The translations under genes and the position numbers were made by a program. Below the pieces are notes generated by a model that searched no databases, was not told the origin of the DNA, and worked only from the letters and a program-made list of their open reading frames with translations. Shown piece after piece: positions 1-13,669 of a DNA stretch of 13,669 nucleotides (the first letter of the stretch is position 1; each line of letters starts with the position of its first letter). The DNA comes from Sulfolobus ellipsoid virus 1 and six more viruses of crenarchaea, in the IMG/VR virus record IMGVR_UViG_2974636107_000001, positions 1-13,669 of that record, one strand, 5' to 3'.

Positions 1-58
1 TGTGTGATGTGAGCGATACATTCACACAGAACAGCTATGACCATGATTACCAATTCCC
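1..58 (+). other. Cloning-vector remnant: lac operator, M13 reverse-primer site, lacZ-alpha start and EcoRI/half-SmaI (pUC8/M13mp8-type)
   Basis: 31-50 ACAGCTATGACCATGATTAC matches the lacZ-alpha 5' end of pUC/M13. 1-30 reads as TGTGTGGAATTGTGAGCGGATAACAATTTCACACAGGAA with base runs collapsed. 51-58 CAATTCCC resembles GAATTCCC|GGG (blunt SmaI cloning). Confidence 0.93.
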
Positions 59-2707: not shown

Positions 2708-3076
2708 ATGTCAGTAGTTGTTGGAAGAATTGCTGGAGCTAATGAGTTGGAAATGCGGTACCAAGCTGGGATTGAGGTTAAACGTGATGTTCAAGTCAAA
2801 AGAGTTGAGAGAAAGATATCGTATAGAGCGCCTAGAATAGAGGACGCAATAGCGTTGAACATATATGTTGAGGATAAGATTAGTGGAATTAAGCCGTATA
2901 TACCTGGTCTAACGGGATTGGTAAGAAAGGCGATTAAAATAGCATATCGTGATGGGGTTGACAGTGCAATGAATATATTTAAGTCATATGATACCGCAAT
3001 ACAGAATGAAATAAGGAAAATAATCGAAGAGGGTCTAAAAATGTATGAAAAAATAAGGAGTGAGGGTAGGCCATGA
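2708..3076 (+). CDS. Major capsid protein 1 homolog (PFV VP1/MCP1-like, SIRV2-fold family), 122 aa from MSVVVGR
   Basis: Basic helical protein behind a strong promoter and coupled to MCP2. MSVV..R...A..L......GIE and PYIPGLTGLVRK resemble my recollection of Pyrobaculum filamentous virus MCP1. The ORF-track start (2672) lies upstream of the TATA box. Confidence 0.7.
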   Translation: MSVVVGRIAGANELEMRYQAGIEVKRDVQVKRVERKISYRAPRIEDAIALNIYVEDKISGIKPYIPGLTGLVRKAIKIAYRDGVDSAMNIFKSYDTAIQNEIRKIIEEGLKMYEKIRSEGRP

Positions 3077-3498
3077 GCTCCCCTATAATTAGTAATTATC
3101 TTGAGGGAATTCGCGATAATAAATATCTGCAACGGATAGAATGGGAAATACAGGTAGCTCAGAGCGGATTCAGAGCTATTCCAATTACTGAGAGATGGTG
3201 GGGTGAGGCATCATATTATATAGACCTAGCCAACAAGATAAAGGCTTTGCCCGAATTGAGCAATGTTAAGACTAAGCCGATTGGATATGCGTTGGCCGCG
3301 GCGAGATACGTTAAACACAACAACTTCGGCATGGCCGAGATATACCTTGATAGATTTGAGTCTGCGCTTGTCCGTAGCGGACTGTCGAGAGATATGGCGA
3401 GAAGGGTTAGAGAGCATGTGGCAAAAATGATAGGGCTTGGTGGTGGAGGCGGTGGTGGAGGAGGCGGTGGAGGCGGTGGTGGAGTAAGTTTGCCTTAA
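3073..3498 (+). CDS. TP2: Major capsid/nucleocapsid protein 2 (probably TP2), 141 aa with C-terminal poly-Gly tail
   Basis: ATGA-coupled to MCP1. Basic helical protein ending in Gly15-VSLP, as I recall for tristromavirus MCP2. Confidence 0.75.
   Translation: MSSPIISNYLEGIRDNKYLQRIEWEIQVAQSGFRAIPITERWWGEASYYIDLANKIKALPELSNVKTKPIGYALAAARYVKHNNFGMAEIYLDRFESALVRSGLSRDMARRVREHVAKMIGLGGGGGGGGGGGGGGGVSLP
3439..3483 (+). repeat. (GGN)15 poly-glycine coding tract
   Basis: ggt/gga/ggc codons, 45 nt, in frame. Confidence 0.95.
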
Positions 3499-5020: not shown

Positions 5021-5503
5021 ATGGTTGAGATTAAACTAGTTAATAAGGAAATAATAAAGTTTGGATTGGCACTTGGAATTGTGAATGAGCTTAATGAATA
5101 CCTATACGCGGCAATGCCTCCAATGTATGACATATTATCTAAATTGTACGGATATGGAAGGACTGTAAATGCAATGCTGTATAGTGTGCTGTTTAATTTA
5201 CTCGAATCGAGGATTGATACACTGAGAAGACTTGACCTTAGTAAGTTCTTTGCTGTGGTAGCATATATGGATGCTGTTAAAGATACCGTTGAGCTTGCAA
5301 TAAATGGATATGCATATGTTACGACTTCTGGATTTACAGTGTATCCTGCATCACAGATTACAGGAACGTATGAGAGCGACTTCAGTCAAGCTAAGGCAGT
5401 ACCCGCAAATACTACAGCAACACAGGTGTGGTTTGCACCCAAGAAGTTTGCTTTGATTACACAGAATAAGATATATACATTCCTAGCTCCTTATTGGTTC
5501 TAA
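5021..5503 (+). CDS. TP3: Envelope/matrix structural protein TP3 (160 aa, PFV VP3-like)
   Basis: Hydrophobic helical protein with its own strong promoter. Length matches my recollection of TTV1 TP3. Confidence 0.7.
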   Translation: MVEIKLVNKEIIKFGLALGIVNELNEYLYAAMPPMYDILSKLYGYGRTVNAMLYSVLFNLLESRIDTLRRLDLSKFFAVVAYMDAVKDTVELAINGYAYVTTSGFTVYPASQITGTYESDFSQAKAVPANTTATQVWFAPKKFALITQNKIYTFLAPYWF

Positions 5504-5542
5504 ACTAAACTAAAGCTTATTAGCAATTCAATACTTTTAGAT

Positions 5543-5815
5543 ATGAACATAGTTAGACATAGGGGTATTGTGTATTGTGATGCAGACTTTATCATATCTC
5601 ATAGAGGGGAGGCTATAAAGGATGTTGTAGGTAGATATCCAGTATTATGTTGTTATAATGATGTATGTTATGACCCTGAAAGGGAAGGAGTATACGATGA
5701 ATCGAATATACATGAGCTTAGAACTATAAAGTTGAACGACTTAGATATAAATAGATATCCTATAACTAGAGGACTATTATTTTTAACAAATCAAATAGTA
5801 AACGCATGGATGTAG
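5543..5815 (+). CDS. Hypothetical Cys-containing protein (90 aa)
   Basis: ORF track entry. AAAGCTTATTA promoter-like element at about 5512-5522. Confidence 0.7.
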   Translation: MNIVRHRGIVYCDADFIISHRGEAIKDVVGRYPVLCCYNDVCYDPEREGVYDESNIHELRTIKLNDLDINRYPITRGLLFLTNQIVNAWM

Positions 5816-6504
5816 CAGTAGTTATACTGTATAGCAGAGATGATGCATTAGACTTACTATATAGAACTTTACATTATTGGTGGAAGAGAAGTGATGGGCT
5901 ACGGGGACAGATATACGTGGTGTCGAATACAAATGTACTACTACCTAGATATGCTAAACTAATACAGCAGAAGAGGAAAGGTGTAGGGGGAGCTAGATGT
6001 GATGCAATAGAATCGACGTCTGAGGATTACATAATATTCTCAGATGGACATGTAACACCACCTCGAGAGATATCGAAGATGTTAGTTGAACCGTGGTCAA
6101 GTGTGCCTATAAATCATATAATATTACCATTTGGTACATCGGGAAGAGTAGCTTATTCATTACCATTTATGCCAGATGAAAGACAATTTTTATGGTGTTC
6201 ATGTAGTAAATATAAAGAAGAGATAACGACAACAGGAGAACCCATTGTAGCTATGAGTAGGAAGTACATATCTATGAGCAAATGCTATACAAGCTATGGA
6301 CTTGACTTGTTTCAATTTACGTTGAGAATGCCTCCAGGACAGTTAATCGGCGATGAGGGGATTCATTTTATAGAGGCAAAAAAGCTTATAAGCAATAGGA
6401 AGCCAAATAAAGATGAGATGAAGGACTTCTACGACACGATATACATAAAAAGGAAAAGTGAAATAGAGGAAGAGATAAAGGAGTGCTTCTGTAGGGCACT
6501 ATGA
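5806..6504 (+). CDS. GT-A fold glycosyltransferase (GT2-like, DxH motif)
   Basis: N-terminal VAVVIL strand, GVGGARCDAI (GxxxARN-like), YIIFSDGH metal motif and YGLDLFQF acceptor-region motif. Confidence 0.85.
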   Translation: MDVAVVILYSRDDALDLLYRTLHYWWKRSDGLRGQIYVVSNTNVLLPRYAKLIQQKRKGVGGARCDAIESTSEDYIIFSDGHVTPPREISKMLVEPWSSVPINHIILPFGTSGRVAYSLPFMPDERQFLWCSCSKYKEEITTTGEPIVAMSRKYISMSKCYTSYGLDLFQFTLRMPPGQLIGDEGIHFIEAKKLISNRKPNKDEMKDFYDTIYIKRKSEIEEEIKECFCRAL

Positions 6505-7630
6505 TGCTGTTTTTTACTAATATGATAGTTGACGGAAATTACACAGTATACGAGGATGCAAATTTAGCAATATATATACCTCCAGGTTCAGATTTTGATT
6601 ATATCTTTACCAAAAATGGGCAATTTATTCTACAGATAATTGCTCAAGGTATTGGTGTAATATTTCAGCAAACAGTAAATTATACTGGGCCAGGATTATA
6701 TAAATTCCAGGTAAGTAGCGGTGGAGTAATAACTCAAATAACGCCAATAACAATAGATATAATAATAGGGAATAATATAGTAATATATGAGTTTCAAGGA
6801 ATTATAATACCTGGAGATCAAGCGAGCACAATGGGACTTACAGTTAATGAAGTATCATATCCAGGACAAGGACTATTTATTGTACAAGGATATCCATGGT
6901 ATATGTACAATCCTAATTATCCAGTCGTATTTGCGCCGATTGGATATACTGGATTGTTTATGGGTATCGATAACGTTGTAATGGAGAGACGCACGGTCAG
7001 CCCAACTAATATGTTTTTACAGCCAGACGGAAAAGTGCCATATGCGTATCAATTGACCATAACGATACAGAATGCTAATGCACAGCAGATAATACAGGCC
7101 TTCAATCAAGCTATTGAGTTTGCAGCTGGGATGGGAGCTGTTGCGTATGAAATTACATCAAATAATCAAATTACATTCTACATAATCTTCATATCGCCAA
7201 CATCTTGGTGGGTAGTAGCTTTAGTATTTGTAGTTGCATTAGCCCTTTTGGCCGCGGCTGTTTTTGTGGATAAGTTAACGAAAGGAGTAGCAATGGACAT
7301 GCAGGCGCAGGCGATATCAAATGCATATAATGCAAATACGCAAGCGTTTCAGCAGTGTATTTCCAGCTGTTATCAGCAGACGTCTGGAAGGACGCAATGC
7401 ATAAACAATTGTTATGCTAATTACGTGAAAGTTTTAACGATGTTGGGAGCGCAGTTTGGTTCACTAAATCAAGTTCTAAGTCAGCCAACTCTAAGCTTTA
7501 GTGGACAGACGAATGTTAGCGTGCAAACTAACTGGGCAACGGTAGCGGCGTTACGTTGATAATAGGTGGTGCGGGGGTAGCGTGGGGTATCTATGAGTGG
7601 AAGAAGAAGAAAAAGAGTAAAACACAGTAA
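6501..7630 (+). CDS. Membrane/virion protein (352 aa as annotated, ~376 aa after a -1 frameshift at about 7553)
   Basis: Beta-rich N-terminus, TM helix WWVVALVFVVALALLAAAVFV and twin CxxxC motifs. The -1 frame continues TLIIGGAGVAWGIYEWKKKKKSKTQ* (stop at 7630). Confidence 0.75.
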
Positions 7631-7641
7631 AGCATAAATAC
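7630..7641 (+). promoter_or_regulatory. Putative BRE/TATA promoter
   Basis: AAAGCATAAATA about 20 nt before GTG 7661. Confidence 0.45.
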
Positions 7642-7660
7642 CTATACTTATTGAATAACT

Positions 7661-8362
7661 GTGATAGTAGGTATAACTGATAAATATGTATTTCATTCAA
7701 AACCATTTTCAGCAACTAAGAAGTTTCTAAGATATAAAGATAAAATACATGTATATACTGGCCCAATTTACTTTCTATCTTCAAACATAGATTTGAACTC
7801 ACTTAAGTACTTAATGTCGGATGTAGGATATTGTAGTCCACCAGGTAAGAACAATAGTGACTATCTTACAGCATTCCATTGTGTATCGAGGGAGATGTGC
7901 AATATAGTGAGTAATATACAATTATCGGACGGGACGAAAGTGAATGTAATAAAGACGCCATATATGAAACACTGTAGTAATATTTTATGTAGATTACTAT
8001 TCGAGATTGGACTGAATAGGTTATTTCCAATGTGTATAGAAGATGAAGATTTAGCATGGATAAGTGCTGGGAATAATATTGGACCTACTAAAGGAGTATT
8101 ATTTGCAGGTTCTCTAGGTTCGATATATGGTAGTATTGCAATATTTAGTGGAGATTTAATAGTAGGAAAGAAATACAAGGTGATATCTAGAGATTTCTAC
8201 ATAGGAAAGACAATAGAGTGGGAAACGACTATAAATGGGAAAGGAATATTTTATGTTCTTTATGAAAATGGAAAAGGAATTTGGATAAGAGGATATTACA
8301 GCTTTCCAACGCAGGTTAGGATAAAACCTGGATTCTCTGGAAGCCCAGTGATTGAGGAGTAA
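7661..8362 (+). CDS. Trypsin/chymotrypsin-like serine protease
   Basis: Triad motifs in order: YLTAFHCV (His), EDEDLAWI (Asp), KPGFSGSPVI (Ser). Confidence 0.85.
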   Translation: MIVGITDKYVFHSKPFSATKKFLRYKDKIHVYTGPIYFLSSNIDLNSLKYLMSDVGYCSPPGKNNSDYLTAFHCVSREMCNIVSNIQLSDGTKVNVIKTPYMKHCSNILCRLLFEIGLNRLFPMCIEDEDLAWISAGNNIGPTKGVLFAGSLGSIYGSIAIFSGDLIVGKKYKVISRDFYIGKTIEWETTINGKGIFYVLYENGKGIWIRGYYSFPTQVRIKPGFSGSPVIEE

Positions 8363-8372
8363 AGTTTTTATA
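8361..8372 (+). promoter_or_regulatory. BRE + TATA promoter
   Basis: AAAG-TTTTTATA about 21 nt before ATG 8393. Confidence 0.55.
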
Positions 8373-8392
8373 GTGAAGTACGGAGTATGACA

Positions 8393-8699
8393 ATGAATAA
8401 TGTCTCGAGAATAATACTTACTGGGATTATGATTTGGCTATTTGTGTAGCAGCTATCTAGTTGTACCTACTAGTCCACTTAAAGTGGCATTTATAATGGG
8501 TGTAGAAGTTTTAGGAGGCATATTCAGCAAAAGGTTTACGTCTATAGTGGGTTCATTTATTTGGTTCATTATAACACCTATTCTACTATATCTGCCATGG
8601 CCTCTAGCTATGCTGGGATTTCTAACGCTCTATGGTGCATTACCTTTTGGTGTCGGGATAGTCAATTGGCCATATCCTCGAGATGCCTGCGGTTGTTAA
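8393..8699 (+). CDS. Multi-pass membrane protein with a +1 frameshift at about 8433 (ORF track shows only 8442..8699)
   Basis: MNNVSRIILTGIM.. stops at 8449. The other frame is open from 8433 (FGYLCSSYLVVPTSPLKVAFIMG..) with three further hydrophobic segments. Confidence 0.6.
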
Positions 8700-8701
8700 A
8701 A

Positions 8702-8716
8702 AATAGACTTATAATA
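8702..8716 (+). promoter_or_regulatory. Putative BRE/TATA promoter
   Basis: AATAGAC-TTATAATA about 20 nt before ATG 8736. Confidence 0.55.
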
Positions 8717-8735
8717 TAGAGTGAATTAACATCGC

Positions 8736-8998
8736 ATGATTTTTCATAAGGACTCGAGAACAATAGACTTGGATTATGGTCATATTATTATGGGTATTGA
8801 AAGGAAATCTCGAGGAAATTATGACCTATATATACTGATTAAGAAGGAAGGAAAATTTGAAGTTGACAGTATATTTACTGGAGATGTAATGGTGGTTGAT
8901 AGAGGAAGTTTTGTATCGACTTCTAGAGGATTCCCGATGCTTCTTGTAGAGGTTCCCGATCGATAGATTTTAATGCGGTTAAAACTAAATGGACATGA
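8736..8998 (+). CDS. Hypothetical protein (~72 aa after removing the vector-like insert, ...[17 protein letters not shown])
   Basis: Deleting 8920-8963 gives a frame ending TGA 8996-8998, an ATGA overlap with the GT start at 8995. Confidence 0.65.
8915..8964. other. Polylinker-like insert at a ClaI junction (probable artefact)
   Basis: ATCGAC-TTCTAGAGGATTCCC...ATCGAT resembles pUC TCGACTCTAGAGGATCCCC. Near-copy at 9834-9881. Confidence 0.75.
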
Positions 8999-10005
8999 TT
9001 TTGGGTATTAGTGCATATAGAAAAGAAACAAAAACGGGTCTGAGAAACACGATTTATACGGCAATAAATACGGGAAAAGTAAAGAAGATACTTCTGGGAC
9101 TCGATAAACCTGAAGATAAGGAGATATTCAACGACATAATAAACGAATTTAAAGACTATATTATAGACGTAGTATACGCAGAAGGATTGGGAGCTAATAG
9201 AAATGAACTATTAGTACGTGGTTCTGAAGAAAATGAAGACTACATATGCTTGGCTGACAGCCACCTATACTTCATTACACCAGTGGCAGACATAGTTAAA
9301 ACGATGTGTAACTCTCAGGCATGTGATTTCAAACGATTTGACTTTGGATTTGATGTTGAGAACAACCCACTATCAGTACTTAATAGATCGGTACATCACT
9401 TCGGTCAGTTTAATATCGACAGGTTGGCCAATAACTATATCTTCAGTTGTGAATACAAATACTATGCCAATAATCCATTCTTATGCTTCAAGAAAAGCGC
9501 AATTAAGGAGCTACTTAATATATATGGAGGAAAAATAATACCGTGGCAACACTATGGAGCTGATATGGAACAGATATACGTTTCAATAGTGAGAAGATAT
9601 GGGAGAACAGCTGGCAAATGTATCGGAACTTCACCAATATACGGACATAGAGCTACTGTAAGTAATACTGAACATGAATTTTGGAAATCGAGATGGACGA
9701 TTAAAGATTATAGCGAAGGATGGTATCAAGCAAATGCGTGCTTCCTTGCACTTCATATACCTCGAGAGTTGTGGAATCTGAAACCAAGAATATTTGAACC
9801 AGACAAATGTAAATTACATATAAACTTTATAAAATCGACTCTAGAGGATTCCCAAGCTTCTTCTAGAGGTACCGCATCGATGATATATGCAGTTGATGGA
9901 ATAGATAGAAACATACTTAACTATCTAGGTAAATATACGGCTGATAGTACTGGAACTGTAAGCTTAACCAATCTTCAACCTGGTAAATATATAGCTATTG
10001 AGTAA
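8995..10005 (+). CDS. GT-A fold glycosyltransferase (GT2-like, DSH motif); C-terminal ~55 aa unreliable
   Basis: MILGISAY strand, [15 protein letters not shown] and [15 protein letters not shown] motifs. It spans the vector-like insert at 9834-9881. Confidence 0.85.
9834..9881. other. Polylinker-like insert at a ClaI junction (probable artefact)
   Basis: ATCGACTCTAGAGGATTCCCAAGCTT...GGTACC..ATCGAT packs XbaI, HindIII and KpnI sites. The first 15 nt after A (TCGACTCTAGAGGAT) match the pUC polylinker. Confidence 0.8.
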
Positions 10006-10006
10006 T

Positions 10007-11089
10007 GTGTCGTACCAAATAACTATAAATAATAATACTACAAGTAACGTTCAAAATATAGTTATAGCTGATCCTAATCTAGCATCTTTAGGTGAAAATG
10101 TAGTATTTAGTGATTCTCAAGGACCATTATCATCGTTGTATGTATATGATGGTGTATGGGTAGTTAAATTAAGGTCACCGCTTTCACCTGGACAGAGTAT
10201 AACAATAACAGCATCTAGTGGTACACCTAATATAGACCCCACAATAGCACTATACTATAATAATGGAAGCTCATATTCAAACCTTACACTAGTAGGTTCA
10301 CCTACAGTATCTATTGTACAGGACTTTGGTGGATATGCAATAAGTGCATATGCATCTGGGGACTTCTTCTTAGTAGCATCGCCTACTGGATTTACTCCAA
10401 GTAGCAGTAGACTACTAGTTGTTGATAGATGGGCAACTACTCCTACGAGTCTTGACGCAGTAGGTTTGAGGTTATATGCAGATACTAACGACTGGTTCGG
10501 TGTAGTTAGGAAATATATTAATGGAGCTCAGAATGTAAGCATTGAACAAAAGATATCTGGAACATATTCAGTAGTAAATGAAATAGATATATCACAGTTT
10601 GCGGCATTTACTGATCCATTAGTAATGTACTTATCAATAAATGGAAGTACTGCAAACGTAAAGGTATACAAACAGGGCTCAAACATTGGAACTGTAAGTG
10701 GTAACTATTCTACTACTCCATATGGAAATCCATCTATGGCAGGATATGGAACAGTTGATAAGCATTATGCTAACTTTATTGTGTTACCATATGAGCCAGA
10801 CCCACAGGTAACAGTTACTCCTATATCTTCACCATCTCCTACTCCTACACCGACACCGACGCCTACGCCTACACCGACATATGATATCACTTATGTAGTA
10901 TTTGATGTAACGCCTTCACCTACTCCAACTCCTACTCTTACATCGACACCCACTCCTACTCCTACGCCAACATATGATATAACTTATGTAATATTCGATG
11001 TAACACCTTCACCCACACCTACTCCAACACCTACTCCTACACCAACTCCGACGCCAACTCCTACATCGACAACGTCATCTAACATCTAG
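10007..11089 (+). CDS. TPX: TPX surface protein (360 aa from GTG): DUF2341-like N-terminus, beta-sandwich/lectin-like domain, Thr-Pro stalk; anchor in the +1 frame to 11222
   Basis: [20 protein letters not shown] resembles DUF2341. Thr-Pro blocks are separated by YDITYV(V/I)FDV. Matches my recollection of TTV1 TPX. Confidence 0.85.
10832..11066 (+). repeat. Three Thr-Pro blocks separated by two copies of a 10-codon spacer (93-bp period)
   Basis: acatatgatatcacttatgtagtatttgatgtaacgccttcacc at 10877 and acatatgatataacttatgtaatattcgatgtaacaccttcacc at 10970. Confidence 0.95.
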
Positions 11090-11231
11090 TTGTAATCCAA
11101 TAATAACAACAGGTATTCAATTCCTTGACAGTATAGTATTGTGTATAAATGGATTGGGAATAACAGTGTTCATAATAATGCTAATTGTAATAGCAATAAT
11201 AATTATAGCATATATAATATGATAAACATAG

Positions 11232-11366
11232 ATGGAGACTCAGTGTGAATATGGAATACAGTGTACTAATGAAGAAAAATGTATATGGCTCGGAGGTACA
11301 TGTATCAAGAAGTGTGAACATGGATGTTGTTGTATATTTATTACTTTGAATGATACACACTACTAA
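11232..11366 (+). CDS. Small Cys-rich peptide (44 aa, 8 Cys), not in ORF track
   Basis: METQCEYGIQCTNEEKCIWLGGTCIKKCEHGCCCIFITLNDTHY, starting 10 nt after the stop of the TPX anchor frame. Confidence 0.6.
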   Translation: METQCEYGIQCTNEEKCIWLGGTCIKKCEHGCCCIFITLNDTHY

Positions 11367-11403
11367 ATAATAACGTTACTGATTATATCACTGAACCTTA
11401 TTA

Positions 11404-11423
11404 ATCGATCCTCTAGAGTCGAT
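11404..11423. other. Vector polylinker remnant at a ClaI/AccI junction
   Basis: GATCCTCTAGAGTCGA (11407-11422) is a 16-nt match to pUC/M13 BamHI-XbaI-SalI. GT|CGAT is the product of ligating a ClaI end into AccI. Confidence 0.9.
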
Positions 11424-11523
11424 AACTTCGAAAAGCATGAGCTTTACTGATATATAAGGCTGATAGGACTATTAGAGTTTCTAAAATTAGTTGAATCTGC
11501 CGAATTAATAATGATGGGTAGCT

Positions 11524-11844
11524 ATGATAGCTGAGCAGATATTTATAATAATATTAGTATTAACAGTACTACACACGGCGATTGAAAGGATAGCTAAGCG
11601 TAGTCTATCATATAGTAATGTAAATTACACATATACTCAGTCGATATCGTTCTTAGTGGGATATACTATAGTTTACATAATTATGTCACATATAAGCCAT
11701 GCGGTCATTATATCTATAATGATTATGATATCATATGCGATATATATTGTAATTAAGATGAGAAATAATCAGCAAATACAGAACGATATTGAGATGTTTA
11801 TGTTTGGAATGATAGCTGGACTAGGTATAGAGATAGTAGGATAA
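11524..11844 (+). CDS. Multi-pass membrane protein (106 aa)
   Basis: Three to four hydrophobic segments. Confidence 0.75.
   Translation: MIAEQIFIIILVLTVLHTAIERIAKRSLSYSNVNYTYTQSISFLVGYTIVYIIMSHISHAVIISIMIMISYAIYIVIKMRNNQQIQNDIEMFMFGMIAGLGIEIVG
11779..11835 (+). repeat. Diverged direct repeat, copy 1 (encodes QNDIEMFMFGMIAGLGIEI)
   Basis: 45/57 nt identical to 12459-12515 in a gapless manual alignment. Confidence 0.85.
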
Positions 11845-11854
11845 AGTATATAAA
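11843..11854 (+). promoter_or_regulatory. BRE + TATA in front of the Thr-Pro cassette
   Basis: AAAG-TATATAAA, with GTA 11874 at the 20-nt spacing where other genes have their start codon. Confidence 0.55.
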
Positions 11855-11873
11855 TAAGTAGGAATTAATTAGC

Positions 11874-12458
11874 GTATCTGCAACTCCAACGCCTACGCCT
11901 ACACCCACACCAACGCCAACTCCGACGCCTACTCCTACCCCTACTCCGACACCTACGCCGACTCCCACTCCAACACCTACTCCGACTCCGACACCTACTC
12001 CAACACCAACGCCAACTCCGACACCGACTCCAACGCCAACGCCTACTCCTACACCAACCCCAACACCTACCCCTACTCCTACACCTACGCCGACTCCGAC
12101 TCCGACACCCACTCCTACGCCTACTCCGACTCCTACCCCAACTCCTACTCCCACTCCCACCCCTACTCCGACTCCAACACCGACTCCGACACCTACTCCG
12201 ACGCCTACTCCGACTCCAACGCCGACTCCTACACCAACGCCTTCACCTACACCAACTCCCACCCCTACTCCGACTCCGACGCCAACTCCGACTCCCACTC
12301 CAACGCCTACACCAACTCCGACGTCATGTAAACCGATAATTACTACTGGAGTATCATGGTTAGATACAACGATAATATGTGCTGGAAGTGTTGGTATTTC
12401 GCTATTTGAAATATTACTATCAATACTAGTAATACTGCTTATAATAGCACTGATATAA
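11874..12458 (+). pseudogene. Start-less TPX-like cassette: (Thr-Pro)~73 plus a C-terminal membrane anchor
   Basis: Frame open 11862-12458 with no ATG/GTG/TTG start before the tract. Ends [44 protein letters not shown]. Confidence 0.75.
11883..12323 (+). repeat. 441-nt (ACN CCN)n Thr-Pro repeat with a single Ser
   Basis: 147 codons alternating T/P using all synonymous codons. One TCA at about 12243. Confidence 0.97.
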
Positions 12459-12515
12459 CAGAATGATATAGAGATGATAATATTTGGAATGATAGGTGAC
12501 CTAGGGATGACGATA
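12459..12515 (+). repeat. Diverged direct repeat, copy 2 (QNDIEMIIFGMIGDLGMTI remnant)
   Basis: See copy 1. Lies in frame directly after the cassette's TAA. Confidence 0.85.
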
Positions 12516-12558: not shown

Positions 12559-13669
12559 GTGCCATCATTTAGTACACAGTCAATAACTAGACCGTCTGTA
12601 GGTGTAGCAATTGGACCCGATGGAATATATAGAGCTCTTTATGGATGGTATGGAAATGAACAGCCGCTGGAAATAGATAAATGTTCATATGATTTATCGA
12701 CTTGTTCTCCTGTAGTATCGAGTGGACCAACAATAGGTGATGGATATGGAGGATTTTATGATGGAACTAATATATGGTTCAGTGGTTCAGATGAGGCGAA
12801 TGATCAAGGAGTGGTAGCAAGCTATAATCCATCTACAGGAGCATTCAATTATGCATATTATCCTGGTAATTCTACAAAATACGTAATTAAGATATTCTAC
12901 TATAATGGATACTACTATTTGATAACATGCTGTGACCCAGGAACACTACTTAAGTGCACAAATCCTCTAAATCCGTCTACATGTACCCAGCTTAATATAA
13001 ATGCACCTACTTCATTTACAGTTCAAGAATACTATATGTATACACAAGGCTCATATGCACTACTATCATACTTCCAGAAAAATATGAATAATAAATTGTT
13101 CAGTTTATGTAATTTCGATGGAACAAATCTATATAACTGTATAAATATATACTCTACGACTGGAATACTACATTATCTCCATCACAGTTTACTAGAGGAG
13201 CAATATGTGGAGATAATATAGTATTCCCAGATATTATAAACAATGGAAGTAGTGTTGAGTTCGATGTATATGTAGCGCCTCTTTCAAATCCAACTAGTTA
13301 TACCAAAGTTTATAGTTCAACATATACACTATCTACTACTACTGGTGAGCTTCATGCGAATATAGCATGTCTTGGAGGAAGGTTTGCTATTGCGCAACTA
13401 TCTCGATCTTCGGTACAAGGAGAAATAACTCTGATAGACCTTAATAATAATTCGGTATATGCTAAATATAGCTACATATATCATTTCCATCCAGATGACG
13501 TAATATTCTATGGTGGAAGTCTAATAGGTTCATGTCAGAATGCGAGTGGAGCAAATCAGTCTCTATTACCAATAATATCGTTTAACTATAGGCTTGCTTC
13601 AGCTAGTGTGTCTGGAAGCTCTGCGACGTTGACTGGATTTGACCCTAATGCTATTGTAAGACTATCGAT
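12559..13669 (+). CDS. Large beta-rich (Y/S/T/N/G/C) putative virion or adhesin protein; -1 frameshift at about 13165; 3'-partial (>=370 aa)
   Basis: ORF 12559..13221. A second frame is open from 13137 to the window end with the same composition (NTTLSPSQFTRGAICGDNIVFPDII...). Confidence 0.75.

What the first reader, a model, noticed from the sequence alone, without database searches (positions are those of the whole stretch)
5806..12458. Possible viral mucin-type O-glycosylation system: two DxH glycosyltransferases plus Thr-Pro stalk proteins
Both GTs carry DxH (DGH, DSH) rather than DxD. They also carry YGLDLFQF / [14 protein letters not shown] motifs reminiscent of the WGGENLEISF..GH region of polypeptide GalNAc transferases (GT27) and the related GT60 enzymes, which glycosylate Thr in Pro-rich repeats. 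The DSH enzyme is directly upstream of TPX, and about 100 Thr-Pro acceptor sites are encoded within 2.5 kb. The virus may build its own glycosylated, length-variable surface stalks.
Basis: inference. Interest (0 to 1): 0.7.

Follow-up and report, generated by a model that had tools for sequence, protein, structure and literature searches.

The report
Archaeal virus glycosyltransferases beside Thr-Pro stalk genes
A filamentous virus of hot-spring archaea (almost certainly Thermoproteus tenax virus 1) encodes two unusual sugar-adding enzymes, one next to a gene for a protein with long Thr-Pro repeats. It is a reasonable but unproven idea that the virus puts sugars on its own stalk-like proteins.

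Summary
The sequence features are real. ORF 5806-6504 carries DGH and ORF 8989-10005 carries DSH. Both belong to small tristromavirus-only families in which DxH, a YG.D motif and a later His are conserved, and the two families are distantly related to each other. The DSH enzyme models well as a GT-A fold. Its PDB matches mix GT2 enzymes (hyaluronan synthase, RmlT, TarP; best E-values) with GT27 polypeptide GalNAc-transferases (equal TM-scores), so the fold search does not decide. The DGH enzyme's weak model hits GT27 first.

I counted 99 Thr-Pro dipeptides in 9998-12458. However, 72 lie in an ORF with no start codon, bracketed by a 58-nt duplication. The membrane anchor after the first Thr-Pro ORF is out of frame.

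In 22 of 29 related loci the DSH-type gene is followed directly by a gene of the form domain + (TP)n + conserved C-terminal anchor, with no signal peptide. PFV1 lacks both the DSH enzyme and Thr-Pro tracts.

My best reading (about 0.38) is cytoplasmic O-glycosylation of tail-anchored Thr-Pro stalk proteins. GT27 membership is not shown, and "mucin-type" is not justified. The record also appears to carry cloning-vector remnants, one of them inside the 3' end of the DSH ORF.

The parts
5806..6504 (+). DGH glycosyltransferase (232 aa), here called GT-A232. It is soluble, with no TM segment.
   Evidence: Sub-threshold Pfam Glycos_transf_2 hit (E 3.8e-4, 20.9 bits against a cut-off of 23.3). An exhaustive HMMER search found only 5 relatives. 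hhalign against the DSH family gives 76% probability, E 2e-5. The AF2 model is poor (pLDDT 55), and its top 17 PDB hits are all GT27. No TM segment.
6043..6051 (+). D80-G-H82 (DxH) of the DGH enzyme
   Evidence: D80 and H82 are invariant in 8 family members and align with the DSH of the other family.
6295..6306 (+). Y164-G-L-D167 motif (putative xED region) of the DGH enzyme
   Evidence: Y164, L166 and D167 are invariant. A His about 19-20 residues later is conserved in relatives.
8989..10005 (+). DSH glycosyltransferase ORF as written in the record (338 aa). The trustworthy GT core is roughly 8989-9834 (aa 1-282).
   Evidence: 14-member family at 35-43% identity to the window protein. AF2 pLDDT 73, pTM 0.76, GT-A fold. 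PDB hits to GT2 and GT27. Best viral hit is the PFV2 putative glycosyltransferase. No TM segment.
9256..9264 (+). D90-S-H92 (DxH) of the DSH enzyme
   Evidence: Invariant in 14 sequences.
9553..9564 (+). Y189-G-A-D192. D192 sits at the start of a modelled helix (192-204).
   Evidence: G190 and D192 are invariant and Y189 nearly so. Helix position. This matches the described position of the xED Asp at the start of helix alpha-F.
9646..9648 (+). H220, candidate metal-binding C-terminal His
   Evidence: Invariant in the DSH family and nearly invariant across both families.
9835..9853 (+). Polylinker-like stretch inside the 3' part of the DSH ORF (it encodes 'STLEDS')
   Evidence: 15 nt identical and 18 of 19 matching to the pUC19 SalI-XbaI-BamHI-SmaI polylinker. 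Homology to relatives stops here and pLDDT drops below 50.
9998..11089 (+). It has an N-terminal domain of about 275 aa and three (T/S-P) tracts at 10829-10876, 10910-10969 and 11003-11062.
   Evidence: A 93-nt unit is repeated 2.5 times. No signal peptide and no TM segment. Its frame opens only 3 nt before the TTG start.
11088..11222 (+). Anchor module ([14 protein letters not shown]... followed by a TM helix) in the +1 frame relative to ORF 1
   Evidence: Translation of this piece alone. TM segment. At the DNA level it is homologous to 12327-12455, with a 10-nt gap between the copies that is not a multiple of three.
11232..11366 (+). Small Cys-rich ORF (44 aa), resembling the N-terminal Cys-rich module of the Thr-Pro stalk proteins of relatives
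   Evidence: compared with L001 10907-11836 and L002 6667-7440 / 5444-5761. The resemblance was judged by eye and not scored.
11407..11422 (+). 16 nt identical to the pUC/M13mp polylinker (BamHI-XbaI-AccI), lying between the two Thr-Pro regions
   Evidence: none of 200 shuffles reached the 2 matches (exact or one mismatch) seen in the window. Also. It is flanked by ATCGAT and GTCGAT.
11524..11844 (+). 106-aa two-TM membrane protein. Its 3' end is duplicated after Thr-Pro region 2.
   Evidence: By eye it resembles the 100-aa ORF of L001 at 12858-13160.
11862..12458 (+). Thr-Pro region 2: an open frame without a start codon. It contains 73 consecutive (T/S)P at 11883-12320, then the anchor module [13 protein letters not shown] plus TM at 12327-12455.
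   Evidence: Mixed synonymous codons; TRF periods of 18, 30 and 42.
12458..12515 (+). Second copy of the 58-nt repeat (the first copy is at 11778-11835). The pair brackets Thr-Pro region 2.
   Evidence: family D4, 79% identity.

Best explanation

It encodes two soluble GT-A-fold glycosyltransferases from two distantly related, tristromavirus-specific families. Both share a DxH metal-binding motif, a conserved Asp at the start of helix alpha-F, and a C-terminal His.

The DSH enzyme sits in a cassette of genes for proteins built as: variable N-terminal domain, then a (Thr-Pro)n spacer, then a conserved C-terminal module (C-x-P-[ILV]-[IV]-x-T-G-x3-L-D plus one TM helix). These proteins have no signal peptide, so they are tail-anchored.

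Tristromavirus virions are enveloped inside the cytoplasm. The outward face of such proteins is therefore exposed to cytoplasmic enzymes and nucleotide sugars. The most likely mechanism is that the DSH enzyme, and possibly the DGH enzyme, transfers a sugar from a nucleotide sugar to Thr hydroxyls of the Thr-Pro spacers (or nearby Ser/Thr-rich surfaces) of these envelope or terminal-fibre proteins. This would stiffen them and protect them at high temperature.

Shown: the fold, the conserved motifs, the gene linkage, the tail-anchor architecture and the tract-length variability.

Inferred: that the acceptor is a peptide, that Thr-Pro is the site, the topology argument, and the benefit. Sugar identity and anomeric outcome are unknown.
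For: - Fold and motifs: AF2 model of the DSH enzyme has pLDDT 73 and a GT-A topology. DxH, D192 and H220 are invariant.
- DxH is reported as restricted to the peptide O-glycosylating families GT27 and GT60, and the C-terminal His as the third Mn ligand in GT27 (PMC7185993).
- GT27 structures appear among the hits of the DSH enzyme (from rank 19, E 2.5e-8, with the highest TMq of 0.50). They fill the top 17 hits of the DGH enzyme (weak model).
- Linkage: 22 of 29 evaluable loci have a (T/S-P) run of at least 9 in the ORF that begins within about 110 nt of the DSH-type gene's stop. In 20 of them the anchor module is in frame. In L002 the enzyme gene lies inside a cluster of 6 such genes.
- Phyletic hint: PFV1 has neither the DSH enzyme nor any (T/S-P) run of 4 or more.
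- No signal peptides or TM segments in the enzymes or in the N-termini of the stalk proteins.
- Virions assemble in the cell lumen (PMC12662031).
- Precedent for a GT-A gene next to its Thr-rich-repeat substrate: PgfS and Cnm (PMC5856776).
Against: - There is no biochemical evidence.
- The DSH enzyme's best E-values are to GT2 enzymes acting on polysaccharide or teichoic acid.
- No sequence profile reaches any GT27, GT60 or Glyco_transf_7C model.
- All 28 metagenomic homologues form one clade (72-100% identical). The linkage therefore rests on two deep lineages and could be inherited gene order.
- Thr-Pro genes are common in these genomes, so the chance rate of adjacency is high.
- Seven loci have a non-Thr-Pro neighbour, including a pair with identical enzymes and different neighbours (L021 and L022).
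- The DGH family is present in PFV1, which has no Thr-Pro tracts.
- In PFV2 the enzyme travels with a glycoside hydrolase, in a genome context that includes lectin-like genes, which fits glycan rather than peptide chemistry.
- (Thr-Pro)n linkers can serve as rigid spacers without sugars.
- In this record 72 of 99 TP lie in a start-less ORF.
Confidence: 0.38

Rival explanations
1. The enzymes are GT2-like transferases acting on a non-protein acceptor: envelope or host glycolipids, a lipid-linked oligosaccharide, or host surface glycans. They would form part of a carbohydrate module with the viral glycoside hydrolase and lectin-like proteins. On this reading the Thr-Pro genes are merely neighbours in a variable surface-protein cassette.
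For: - The top Foldseek E-values of the DSH enzyme go to hyaluronan synthase, RmlT, TarP and TarS.
- The only Pfam signal is Glycos_transf_2.
- The viral structural matches are phage and giant-virus GT2 or GtrB-like proteins.
- In PFV2 the enzyme came in with a glycoside hydrolase, and PFV1 has lectin-like genes.
- In L011 and L034 the enzyme's neighbour is the hydrolase-like gene without Thr-Pro.
- The invariant Asp at the start of helix alpha-F is typical of inverting GT2/GT7-type enzymes.
Against: - DxH instead of DxD is reported as specific to GT27/GT60.
- Neither enzyme has a TM segment or amphipathic membrane domain, which lipid-acting GT2 enzymes such as GtrB, DPMS or ArnC usually have.
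- The neighbour is a Thr-Pro gene in 22 of 29 loci.
Confidence: 0.3
2. The enzymes glycosylate other viral proteins, such as the major virion proteins or the Ser/Thr/Asn-rich domains of envelope proteins like ORF 6501-7559. The Thr-Pro tracts stay unmodified and act only as rigid, length-variable spacers that hold N-terminal binding domains away from the envelope.
For: - The DGH gene overlaps the start of ORF 6501-7559, a one-TM protein. By eye this ORF resembles the 343-381 aa proteins of relatives, which sit directly upstream of the DSH-type gene.
- The DGH family is kept in PFV1, which has no Thr-Pro tracts.
- Proline-rich alternating repeats are stiff without sugars (general knowledge).
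Against: The same linkage and DxH arguments as for the main explanation apply. No other obvious Thr-rich acceptor is conserved next to the DSH-type gene.
Confidence: 0.2
3. The apparent local 'system' in this window is partly an artefact of the record. The sequence was assembled from ClaI clones with vector remnants and has frame errors, so the DSH-to-TPX overlap, the start-less Thr-Pro region 2 and the out-of-frame anchor do not reflect the living virus.
For: - Window 8-58 matches the lac operator / lacZ-alpha / EcoRI-SmaI half-site of pUC8-type vectors (score 39 against a shuffle maximum of 19).
- 15- and 16-nt polylinker identities lie at 9835-9849 and 11407-11422, next to ClaI or ClaI/AccI hybrid sites.
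- The record ends at a ClaI site.
- The DSH ORF's tail has no homology to relatives.
Against: - Relatives independently show the enzyme gene directly followed by a Thr-Pro stalk gene, so the biological adjacency is real even if this junction is not exact.
- The polylinker-like element has a diverged second copy at 8915-8964, so it could be a natural repeat.
- This rival concerns details of the record, not the function.
Confidence: 0.5

Closest known systems
Polypeptide N-acetylgalactosaminyltransferases (CAZy GT27) and the related GT60 peptide alpha-GlcNAc-transferases
   Same: GT-A fold. DxH in place of DxD. A C-terminal His about 130 residues downstream. A G-x-acidic motif at helix alpha-F. 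Structural matches to both viral proteins. Their preferred acceptors are Thr flanked by Pro, which (TP)n supplies (my own knowledge).
   Different: No significant sequence-profile match. No type II membrane anchor, no ricin-type lectin domain and no secretory-pathway location. The proteins are much smaller (232 and about 300 aa). GT27 has Asn where an inverting enzyme has its catalytic Asp, whereas here one invariant Asp (D192/D167) sits at the helix start, so the mechanism may differ. The donor sugar is unknown.
GT2 enzymes that decorate polymers (S. aureus TarP/TarS, Listeria RmlT, Chlorella virus hyaluronan synthase)
   Same: These give the best Foldseek E-values for the DSH enzyme (3e-10 to 6e-8). 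Same GT-A core with xED and Mn-dependent chemistry. TarP is itself phage-encoded (my own knowledge).
   Different: These enzymes use DxD, not DxH. They carry oligomerisation or membrane domains that are absent here. Their acceptors are teichoic acid or a growing glycan.
PgfS-Cnm system of Streptococcus mutans, and (from memory) mycobacteriophage virion glycosylation
   Same: A GT-A glycosyltransferase gene lies next to the gene for a surface protein whose Thr-rich repeat region it modifies, which raises protease resistance (PMC5856776). In the mycobacteriophages, virus-encoded transferases modify virion proteins in the cytoplasm (my recollection; the paper was not retrieved).
   Different: PgfS is membrane-bound and works with PMT-like membrane proteins and an epimerase. 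No such partners are present in the window. Those systems are bacterial, not archaeal.
PFV2 ORF35 / 'the glycosyltransferase gene of TTV1' (Tristromaviridae)
   Same: A direct homologue: 33% identity, TM 0.72/0.84. The literature already calls it a glycosyltransferase (bioRxiv 10.1101/2020.01.16.907410).
   Different: In the passages I read, that paper gives no motif analysis, no acceptor proposal and no link to Thr-Pro proteins.

Membership tests
GT-A fold glycosyltransferase superfamily | Rossmann-like alpha/beta/alpha sandwich with a central mixed beta-sheet | tested here: met
   DSH enzyme: AF2 pLDDT 73, pTM 0.76, with 431 PDB matches at E<=1e-3, the 50 listed all glycosyltransferases. DGH enzyme: only residues 1-85 are modelled confidently. 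Its hits are GT-A enzymes and nucleotidyltransferases, and it is related to the DSH family by hhalign.
GT-A fold glycosyltransferase superfamily | DxD-type metal/nucleotide-sugar motif after beta-4, an acidic residue at the start of helix alpha-F (xED), and a C-terminal His | tested here: met
   DSH/DGH, D192/D167 and H220 are invariant or nearly invariant. D192 is the first residue of modelled helix 192-204. Motif definitions come from PMC7185993.
CAZy GT27 (ppGalNAc-T) | DxH instead of DxD, plus a His as the third Mn ligand | tested here: met
   D90-S-H92 with H220, and D80-G-H82 with a conserved His.
CAZy GT27 (ppGalNAc-T) | Significant sequence similarity to the family, i.e. Pfam Glycos_transf_2 plus Glyco_transf_7C (the Gal/GalNAc-T motif WGGENxE...) | tested here: not met
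   The 14 DSH-family members give no Pfam glycosyltransferase hit even at E<=10. The DGH enzyme has only a sub-threshold Glycos_transf_2 hit. Profile searches of PDB sequences find no glycosyltransferase. Only YG.D resembles WGGE.
CAZy GT27 (ppGalNAc-T) | GT27 structures are the closest structural neighbours | tested here: inconclusive
   DSH enzyme: GT2 enzymes rank first by E-value. GT27 appears from rank 19 with TM-scores equal or slightly higher (0.48-0.50). DGH enzyme: GT27 fills ranks 1-17, but the model has pLDDT 55.
CAZy GT27 (ppGalNAc-T) | Type II membrane anchor, a stem, and (usually) a C-terminal ricin-type lectin domain | tested here: not met
   No TM segment. No lectin-domain hit. 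Lengths are 232 and about 300 aa.
CAZy GT27 (ppGalNAc-T) | Transfers alpha-GalNAc from UDP-GalNAc to Ser/Thr of peptides (retaining mechanism) | not testable with these tools
   This needs enzymology. The invariant Asp at the helix start leaves open an inverting mechanism.
CAZy GT2 | Match to the Glycos_transf_2 profile above its threshold, with a canonical DxD | tested here: not met
   The DGH enzyme scores 20.9 bits against a cut-off of 23.3. The DSH family has no hit. The motif is DxH, not DxD.
Tristromavirus Thr-Pro stalk / tail-anchor protein set (defined here) | No signal peptide; a variable N-terminal domain; a (T/S-P) run of at least 9; then C-x-P-[ILV]-[IV]-x-T-G-x3-L-D plus one TM helix at the C-terminus | tested here: inconclusive
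   Relatives meet all of these features. In the window, ORF 9998-11089 has the domain and the tracts but its anchor is out of frame. Region 11862-12458 has the tract and the anchor but no start codon or N-terminal domain.

The most novel reading that the evidence does not exclude
The DxH GT-A enzymes of tristromaviruses are soluble, cytoplasmic protein O-glycosyltransferases. They would sugar-coat the (Thr-Pro)n stalks of tail-anchored envelope or fibre proteins before or during intracellular envelopment. That would make them the first identified enzymes for protein O-glycosylation in the archaeal domain, and a minimal GT27/GT60-like peptide glycosyltransferase of prokaryotic-virus origin.
Probability: 0.3. 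Interest if true: 0.75.

Novelty: new variant of a known kind. Interest (0 to 1): 0.5.

Why it matters
O-glycosylated Ser/Thr-rich regions are common on archaeal surface proteins. The 2018 review I read says the enzymes that make them have not been identified (PMC6098224).

A pair of small, soluble, thermostable viral GT-A enzymes, genetically linked to very simple (TP)n substrates, would make this question directly testable in vitro. If confirmed, the result would:
- show that viruses of hyperthermophiles build their own glycan coat in the cytoplasm;
- explain the long-known but functionless TPX/Thr-Pro repeats of TTV1;
- place a DxH peptide-glycosylating enzyme outside eukaryotes and their parasites.

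If the acceptor turns out to be a glycan or lipid, these are ordinary viral glycosyltransferases with an unusual metal motif.

Tried and rejected
- Sequence searches that found nothing useful:
  - Pfam on all ORFs of the region gave only FV_peptidase for 7661-8362 and a sub-threshold GT2 hit.
  - PHROGs gave nothing.
  - phmmer and profile searches of PDB sequences with the single proteins and with alignments A1, A2 and A5 gave only chance hits.
  - Pfam on all 14 DSH-family members gave nothing.
  - The phage genome collection holds neither this record nor any homologue, by DNA or protein search.
- The word-indexed protein search found no relative of the DGH enzyme. The exhaustive HMMER search found only five.
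- IMG/VR holds only this record and PFV1.
- The original TPX paper (PMC330233) and the PFV1 paper (PMC4780613) are not held. Equating ORF 9998-11089 with 'TPX', and the published account of Thr-Pro length variants, therefore rest on my memory.
- I considered that the sequence after the ClaI site at 8959 comes from pBR322. I rejected this because the alignment score of 16 is below the shuffle maximum of 18.
- I considered that Thr-Pro region 2 is expressed by frameshifting from ORF 11524-11844. I rejected this because that ORF stops at 11844 and the Thr-Pro frame is closed by TAG at 11859-11861.
The xED register (D192 as base, or as the preceding Glu equivalent) is therefore unresolved.

Full report
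**1. What the window is**

The window is AT-rich (about 36% GC), and every plausible gene is on the + strand.
- ORF 7661-8362 is a 'filamentous viruses peptidase' (Pfam PF25658, E 8e-85).
- Homologues of several ORFs lie on metagenomic contigs that also encode the Pyrobaculum filamentous virus capsid protein.
- IMG/VR holds an identical 13,669-bp record, and its only other relative there is a 17,714-bp contig. That is the published length of PFV1.
[quoted passage not shown] That paper is not held, so calling ORF 9998-11089 'TPX' rests on memory.

**2. The observation**

- ORF 5806-6504 (232 aa) has D80-G-H82 and Y164-G-L-D167.
- ORF 8989-10005 (338 aa) has D90-S-H92, Y189-G-A-D192 and G219-H220.
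- ORF 9998-11089 overlaps the DSH ORF's stop. It carries 27 TP and 8 SP dipeptides in three tracts, separated by TYDITYV(V/I)FDV (a 93-nt unit repeated 2.5 times).
- Positions 11883-12320 encode 73 uninterrupted (T/S)P dipeptides.
- The total is 99 TP in 2461 nt.
- The codons are a mixture of all four Thr and all four Pro codons, so this is an old, selected repeat rather than a fresh slippage product.

**3. The two enzymes**

*The DSH enzyme*
- It has 13 homologues at 35-43% identity, all unannotated or named glycosyltransferase.
- D84, D90, S91, H92, G190, D192, Q195, S199, H220 and R221 are invariant.
- AlphaFold2 with this alignment gives a confident GT-A fold for residues 1-280 (pLDDT 73, pTM 0.76).
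- Foldseek against the PDB returns hundreds of matches, and the 50 listed are all glycosyltransferases. The best E-values go to GT2 enzymes: Chlorella virus hyaluronan synthase (3e-10), Listeria RmlT, and S. aureus TarP and TarS. GT27 polypeptide GalNAc-transferases T2 and T1 appear from rank 19 (2.5e-8). All TM-scores fall between 0.40 and 0.50, and the highest belongs to GalNAc-T2. The search therefore does not separate GT2 from GT27.
- Against viral models the best match is the PFV2 'putative glycosyltransferase' (33% identity, TM 0.72/0.84). [quoted passage not shown]

*The DGH enzyme*
- It has only five relatives in an exhaustive search of 1.8 billion representative proteins, plus copies in PFV1 and contigs L001 and L002.
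- In its relatives the motif is DSH.
- Its model is poor apart from residues 1-85 (pLDDT 55).
- Its top 17 PDB matches are all GT27 enzymes (E 4e-5 to 2e-4). This result must be read with caution because of the model quality.

*The two families together*
- They are related: hhalign gives 76% probability and E 2e-5, with the DxH motifs aligned.
- A joint alignment keeps D84, D90, H92, P163, D192 and C274 invariant, and S91, Y189 and H220 nearly so.

**4. What the motifs mean**

A large comparative study of GT-A enzymes (PMC7185993) defines the shared core as three elements:
- DxD;
- an 'xED' acidic residue at the start of helix alpha-F, which is the catalytic base of inverting enzymes;
- a C-terminal His that binds the metal in GT27 and GT8.

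That study states that replacement of DxD by DxH is confined to GT27 and GT60, the two families that O-glycosylate peptide Ser/Thr.

In the model, D192 is the first residue of helix 192-204, and H220 lies on a strand 28 residues later. DxH is the one feature that does point to GT27/GT60.

Whether D192 matches the catalytic Asp (inverting) or the preceding Glu of WGGEN (retaining) could not be settled without a superposition. No sequence profile links either family to GT27, GT60, GT2 or Glyco_transf_7C above threshold.

Membership of GT27 is therefore not established. A GT27-like way of working is not excluded.

**5. The Thr-Pro proteins**

Relatives show clearly what the window shows only in pieces.

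Contigs L001, L002, L006-L010 and many of the loci encode a set of proteins with a shared layout:
- a variable N-terminal domain (Cys-rich plus beta-rich, glycoside-hydrolase-like, or other);
- a (TP)n tract;
- a conserved module C-x-P-[ILV]-[IV]-x-T-G-x3-L-D-x-V-x-F-C, followed by one TM helix and a basic tail.

None has an N-terminal signal peptide, so they are tail-anchored. Tract length differs between relatives with otherwise similar flanks. For example, the counterpart proteins of L002 (382 aa) and L007 (374 aa) differ in total length. Across loci the longest run ranges from 9 to 69 dipeptides. This supports 'length-variable stalks'.

The window has two copies of the anchor module.
- One is in frame behind Thr-Pro region 2 (12327-12455).
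- The other lies behind ORF 9998-11089 but in the +1 frame (11088-11222). The two DNA copies align with a 10-nt gap just before the Cys codon.

Thr-Pro region 2 has no start codon. It follows a TAG directly and is bracketed by a 58-nt direct repeat that duplicates the 3' end of the 106-aa membrane-protein gene. It looks like a recombination remnant or a cassette rather than an independent gene.

**6. Linkage**

Among 29 loci with enough downstream sequence, 22 have an ORF with a (T/S-P) run of at least 9 beginning within about 110 nt of the DSH-type gene's stop. In 20 of these the anchor is in frame. In L002 the enzyme gene lies inside a block of six such genes.

PFV1, which lacks the DSH-type enzyme, has no (T/S-P) run of 4 or more in any frame. 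It keeps the DGH-type enzyme.

Several points weaken this linkage.
- All metagenomic homologues form one clade, 72-100% identical to each other and 36-41% identical to TTV1. Independent support therefore comes from only two deep lineages.
- Thr-Pro genes are frequent in these genomes.
- Seven loci have another neighbour: a beta-propeller-like protein related to window ORF 12559-13221, a second enzyme copy, or a hydrolase-like protein without Thr-Pro.
- Identical enzymes can have different neighbours (L021 and L022).
- PFV2 acquired the enzyme together with a glycoside hydrolase.

**7. Mechanism proposed**

Tristromavirus virions assemble and are enveloped in the cell lumen. The enzymes have no TM segment, and the stalk proteins are tail-anchored. 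A cytoplasmic enzyme can therefore reach the part of these proteins that ends up on the outside of the envelope.

I propose direct transfer of a sugar to Thr of the Thr-Pro spacers (confidence 0.38). The fold, the motifs, the architecture and the linkage are shown. The acceptor, the sugar and the benefit are inferred.

Rivals:
- glycan or lipid acceptors, GT2-like (0.3);
- other protein acceptors, with unmodified Thr-Pro spacers (0.2).

A precedent for a GT-A gene beside its Thr-rich substrate gene is PgfS-Cnm. The enzymes of archaeal O-glycosylation are still unidentified according to the 2018 review, and that is the main reason this is worth testing.

**8. State of the record**

- The first 58 nt match the lac operator, the lacZ-alpha start and the EcoRI-SmaI half-site of a pUC8-type vector (alignment score 39 against a shuffle maximum of 19).
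- Positions 9835-9849 and 11407-11422 are 15 and 16 nt identical to the pUC polylinker. They lie next to ClaI or ClaI/AccI-hybrid sites, and the record ends at a ClaI site.
- The first internal stretch encodes 'STLEDS' inside the DSH ORF. It sits exactly where similarity to all homologues stops and pLDDT collapses.
- The following 41 codons look like half of an Ig-like domain (weak SpaA hit, E 0.056). The Thr-Pro ORF's frame opens only 3 nt before its TTG.
- The true 3' end of the enzyme gene and the true 5' end of the Thr-Pro gene are therefore probably not as written.
- A diverged copy of the same 48-nt element lies at 8915-8964, so a natural repeat cannot be excluded. I leave this unresolved.
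- None of this affects the catalytic core or the linkage seen in relatives.

**9. Verdict**

- 'Mucin-type' and 'GT27/GT60 member' go beyond the evidence.
- The individual components (the TTV1 glycosyltransferase and the TPX repeats) are already in the literature. What appears to be new is the conserved DxH signature, the tail-anchored Thr-Pro protein family, and its linkage to the DSH-type enzyme.

Noticed in passing
window 8-58: The 5' end of the record matches the lac operator, the lacZ-alpha start codon region and the EcoRI-SmaI half-site of a pUC8/M13mp8-type vector (49 identical positions over 51 window bases, with six gap columns; score 39 against a shuffle maximum of 19). The first listed ORF (9-314) therefore begins in vector sequence.
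   Followed up: partly
window 9832-9881, 8915-8964 and 11404-11423: Three polylinker-like elements, all bounded by ClaI or ClaI/AccI-hybrid sites. Positions 9835-9849 and 11407-11422 are 15 and 16 nt identical to the pUC polylinker. Positions 8915-8964 are a diverged copy of 9832-9881. They are either vector remnants at clone junctions or a natural repeated motif. This is unresolved.
   Followed up: partly
window 9880-10005 and 9995-10010: The last 41 codons of the DSH ORF (MIYAVDG...[22 protein letters not shown]) look like the first half of an Ig-like (SpaA/Big_1-type) domain. The Thr-Pro ORF's frame opens 3 nt before its TTG start. The Thr-Pro protein may really begin upstream in the other frame.
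   Followed up: no
window 11088-11222 and 12327-12455; L001, L002, L007, L010, L017, L021 and others: A conserved C-terminal module, C-x-P-[ILV]-[IV]-x-T-G-x3-L-D-x-V-x-F-C plus a TM helix and a basic tail, ends many tristromavirus proteins, with or without a Thr-Pro spacer. A second anchor type (C-x-G-[LV]-N-[IL]-G-G-V-C-[VIM]-P-W-W plus TM) ends others. Neither matches a Pfam family. They could be envelope-targeting signals.
   Followed up: partly
window 11232-11366: A 44-aa Cys-rich ORF (8 Cys, including a CCC triplet) resembles the N-terminal module of the Thr-Pro stalk proteins that follow the DSH-type gene in relatives. Here it stands alone and is followed by a stop.
   Followed up: no
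window 11778-11835 and 12458-12515: A 58-nt direct repeat (79% identical) duplicates the 3' end of the 106-aa membrane-protein gene on either side of Thr-Pro region 2. This looks like the footprint of an insertion or recombination event.
   Followed up: partly
L008 874-1773 and 1818-2714; L018 1265-2146 and 2188-3084: Some relatives carry two tandem copies of the DSH-type glycosyltransferase gene.
   Followed up: no
window 3438-3484; L004 10252-10689: A run of 16 Gly near the C-terminus of ORF 3073-3498 is mirrored by a 15-Gly run in the PFV1 145-aa ORF at L004 10252-10689. This appears to be a conserved poly-Gly tail.
   Followed up: no
window 12559-13221; L016 1159-2409, L022, L030: The 220-aa ORF after Thr-Pro region 2 appears by eye to be homologous to 417-422-aa proteins that, in some relatives, take the place of the Thr-Pro gene directly after the DSH-type enzyme.
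   Followed up: no
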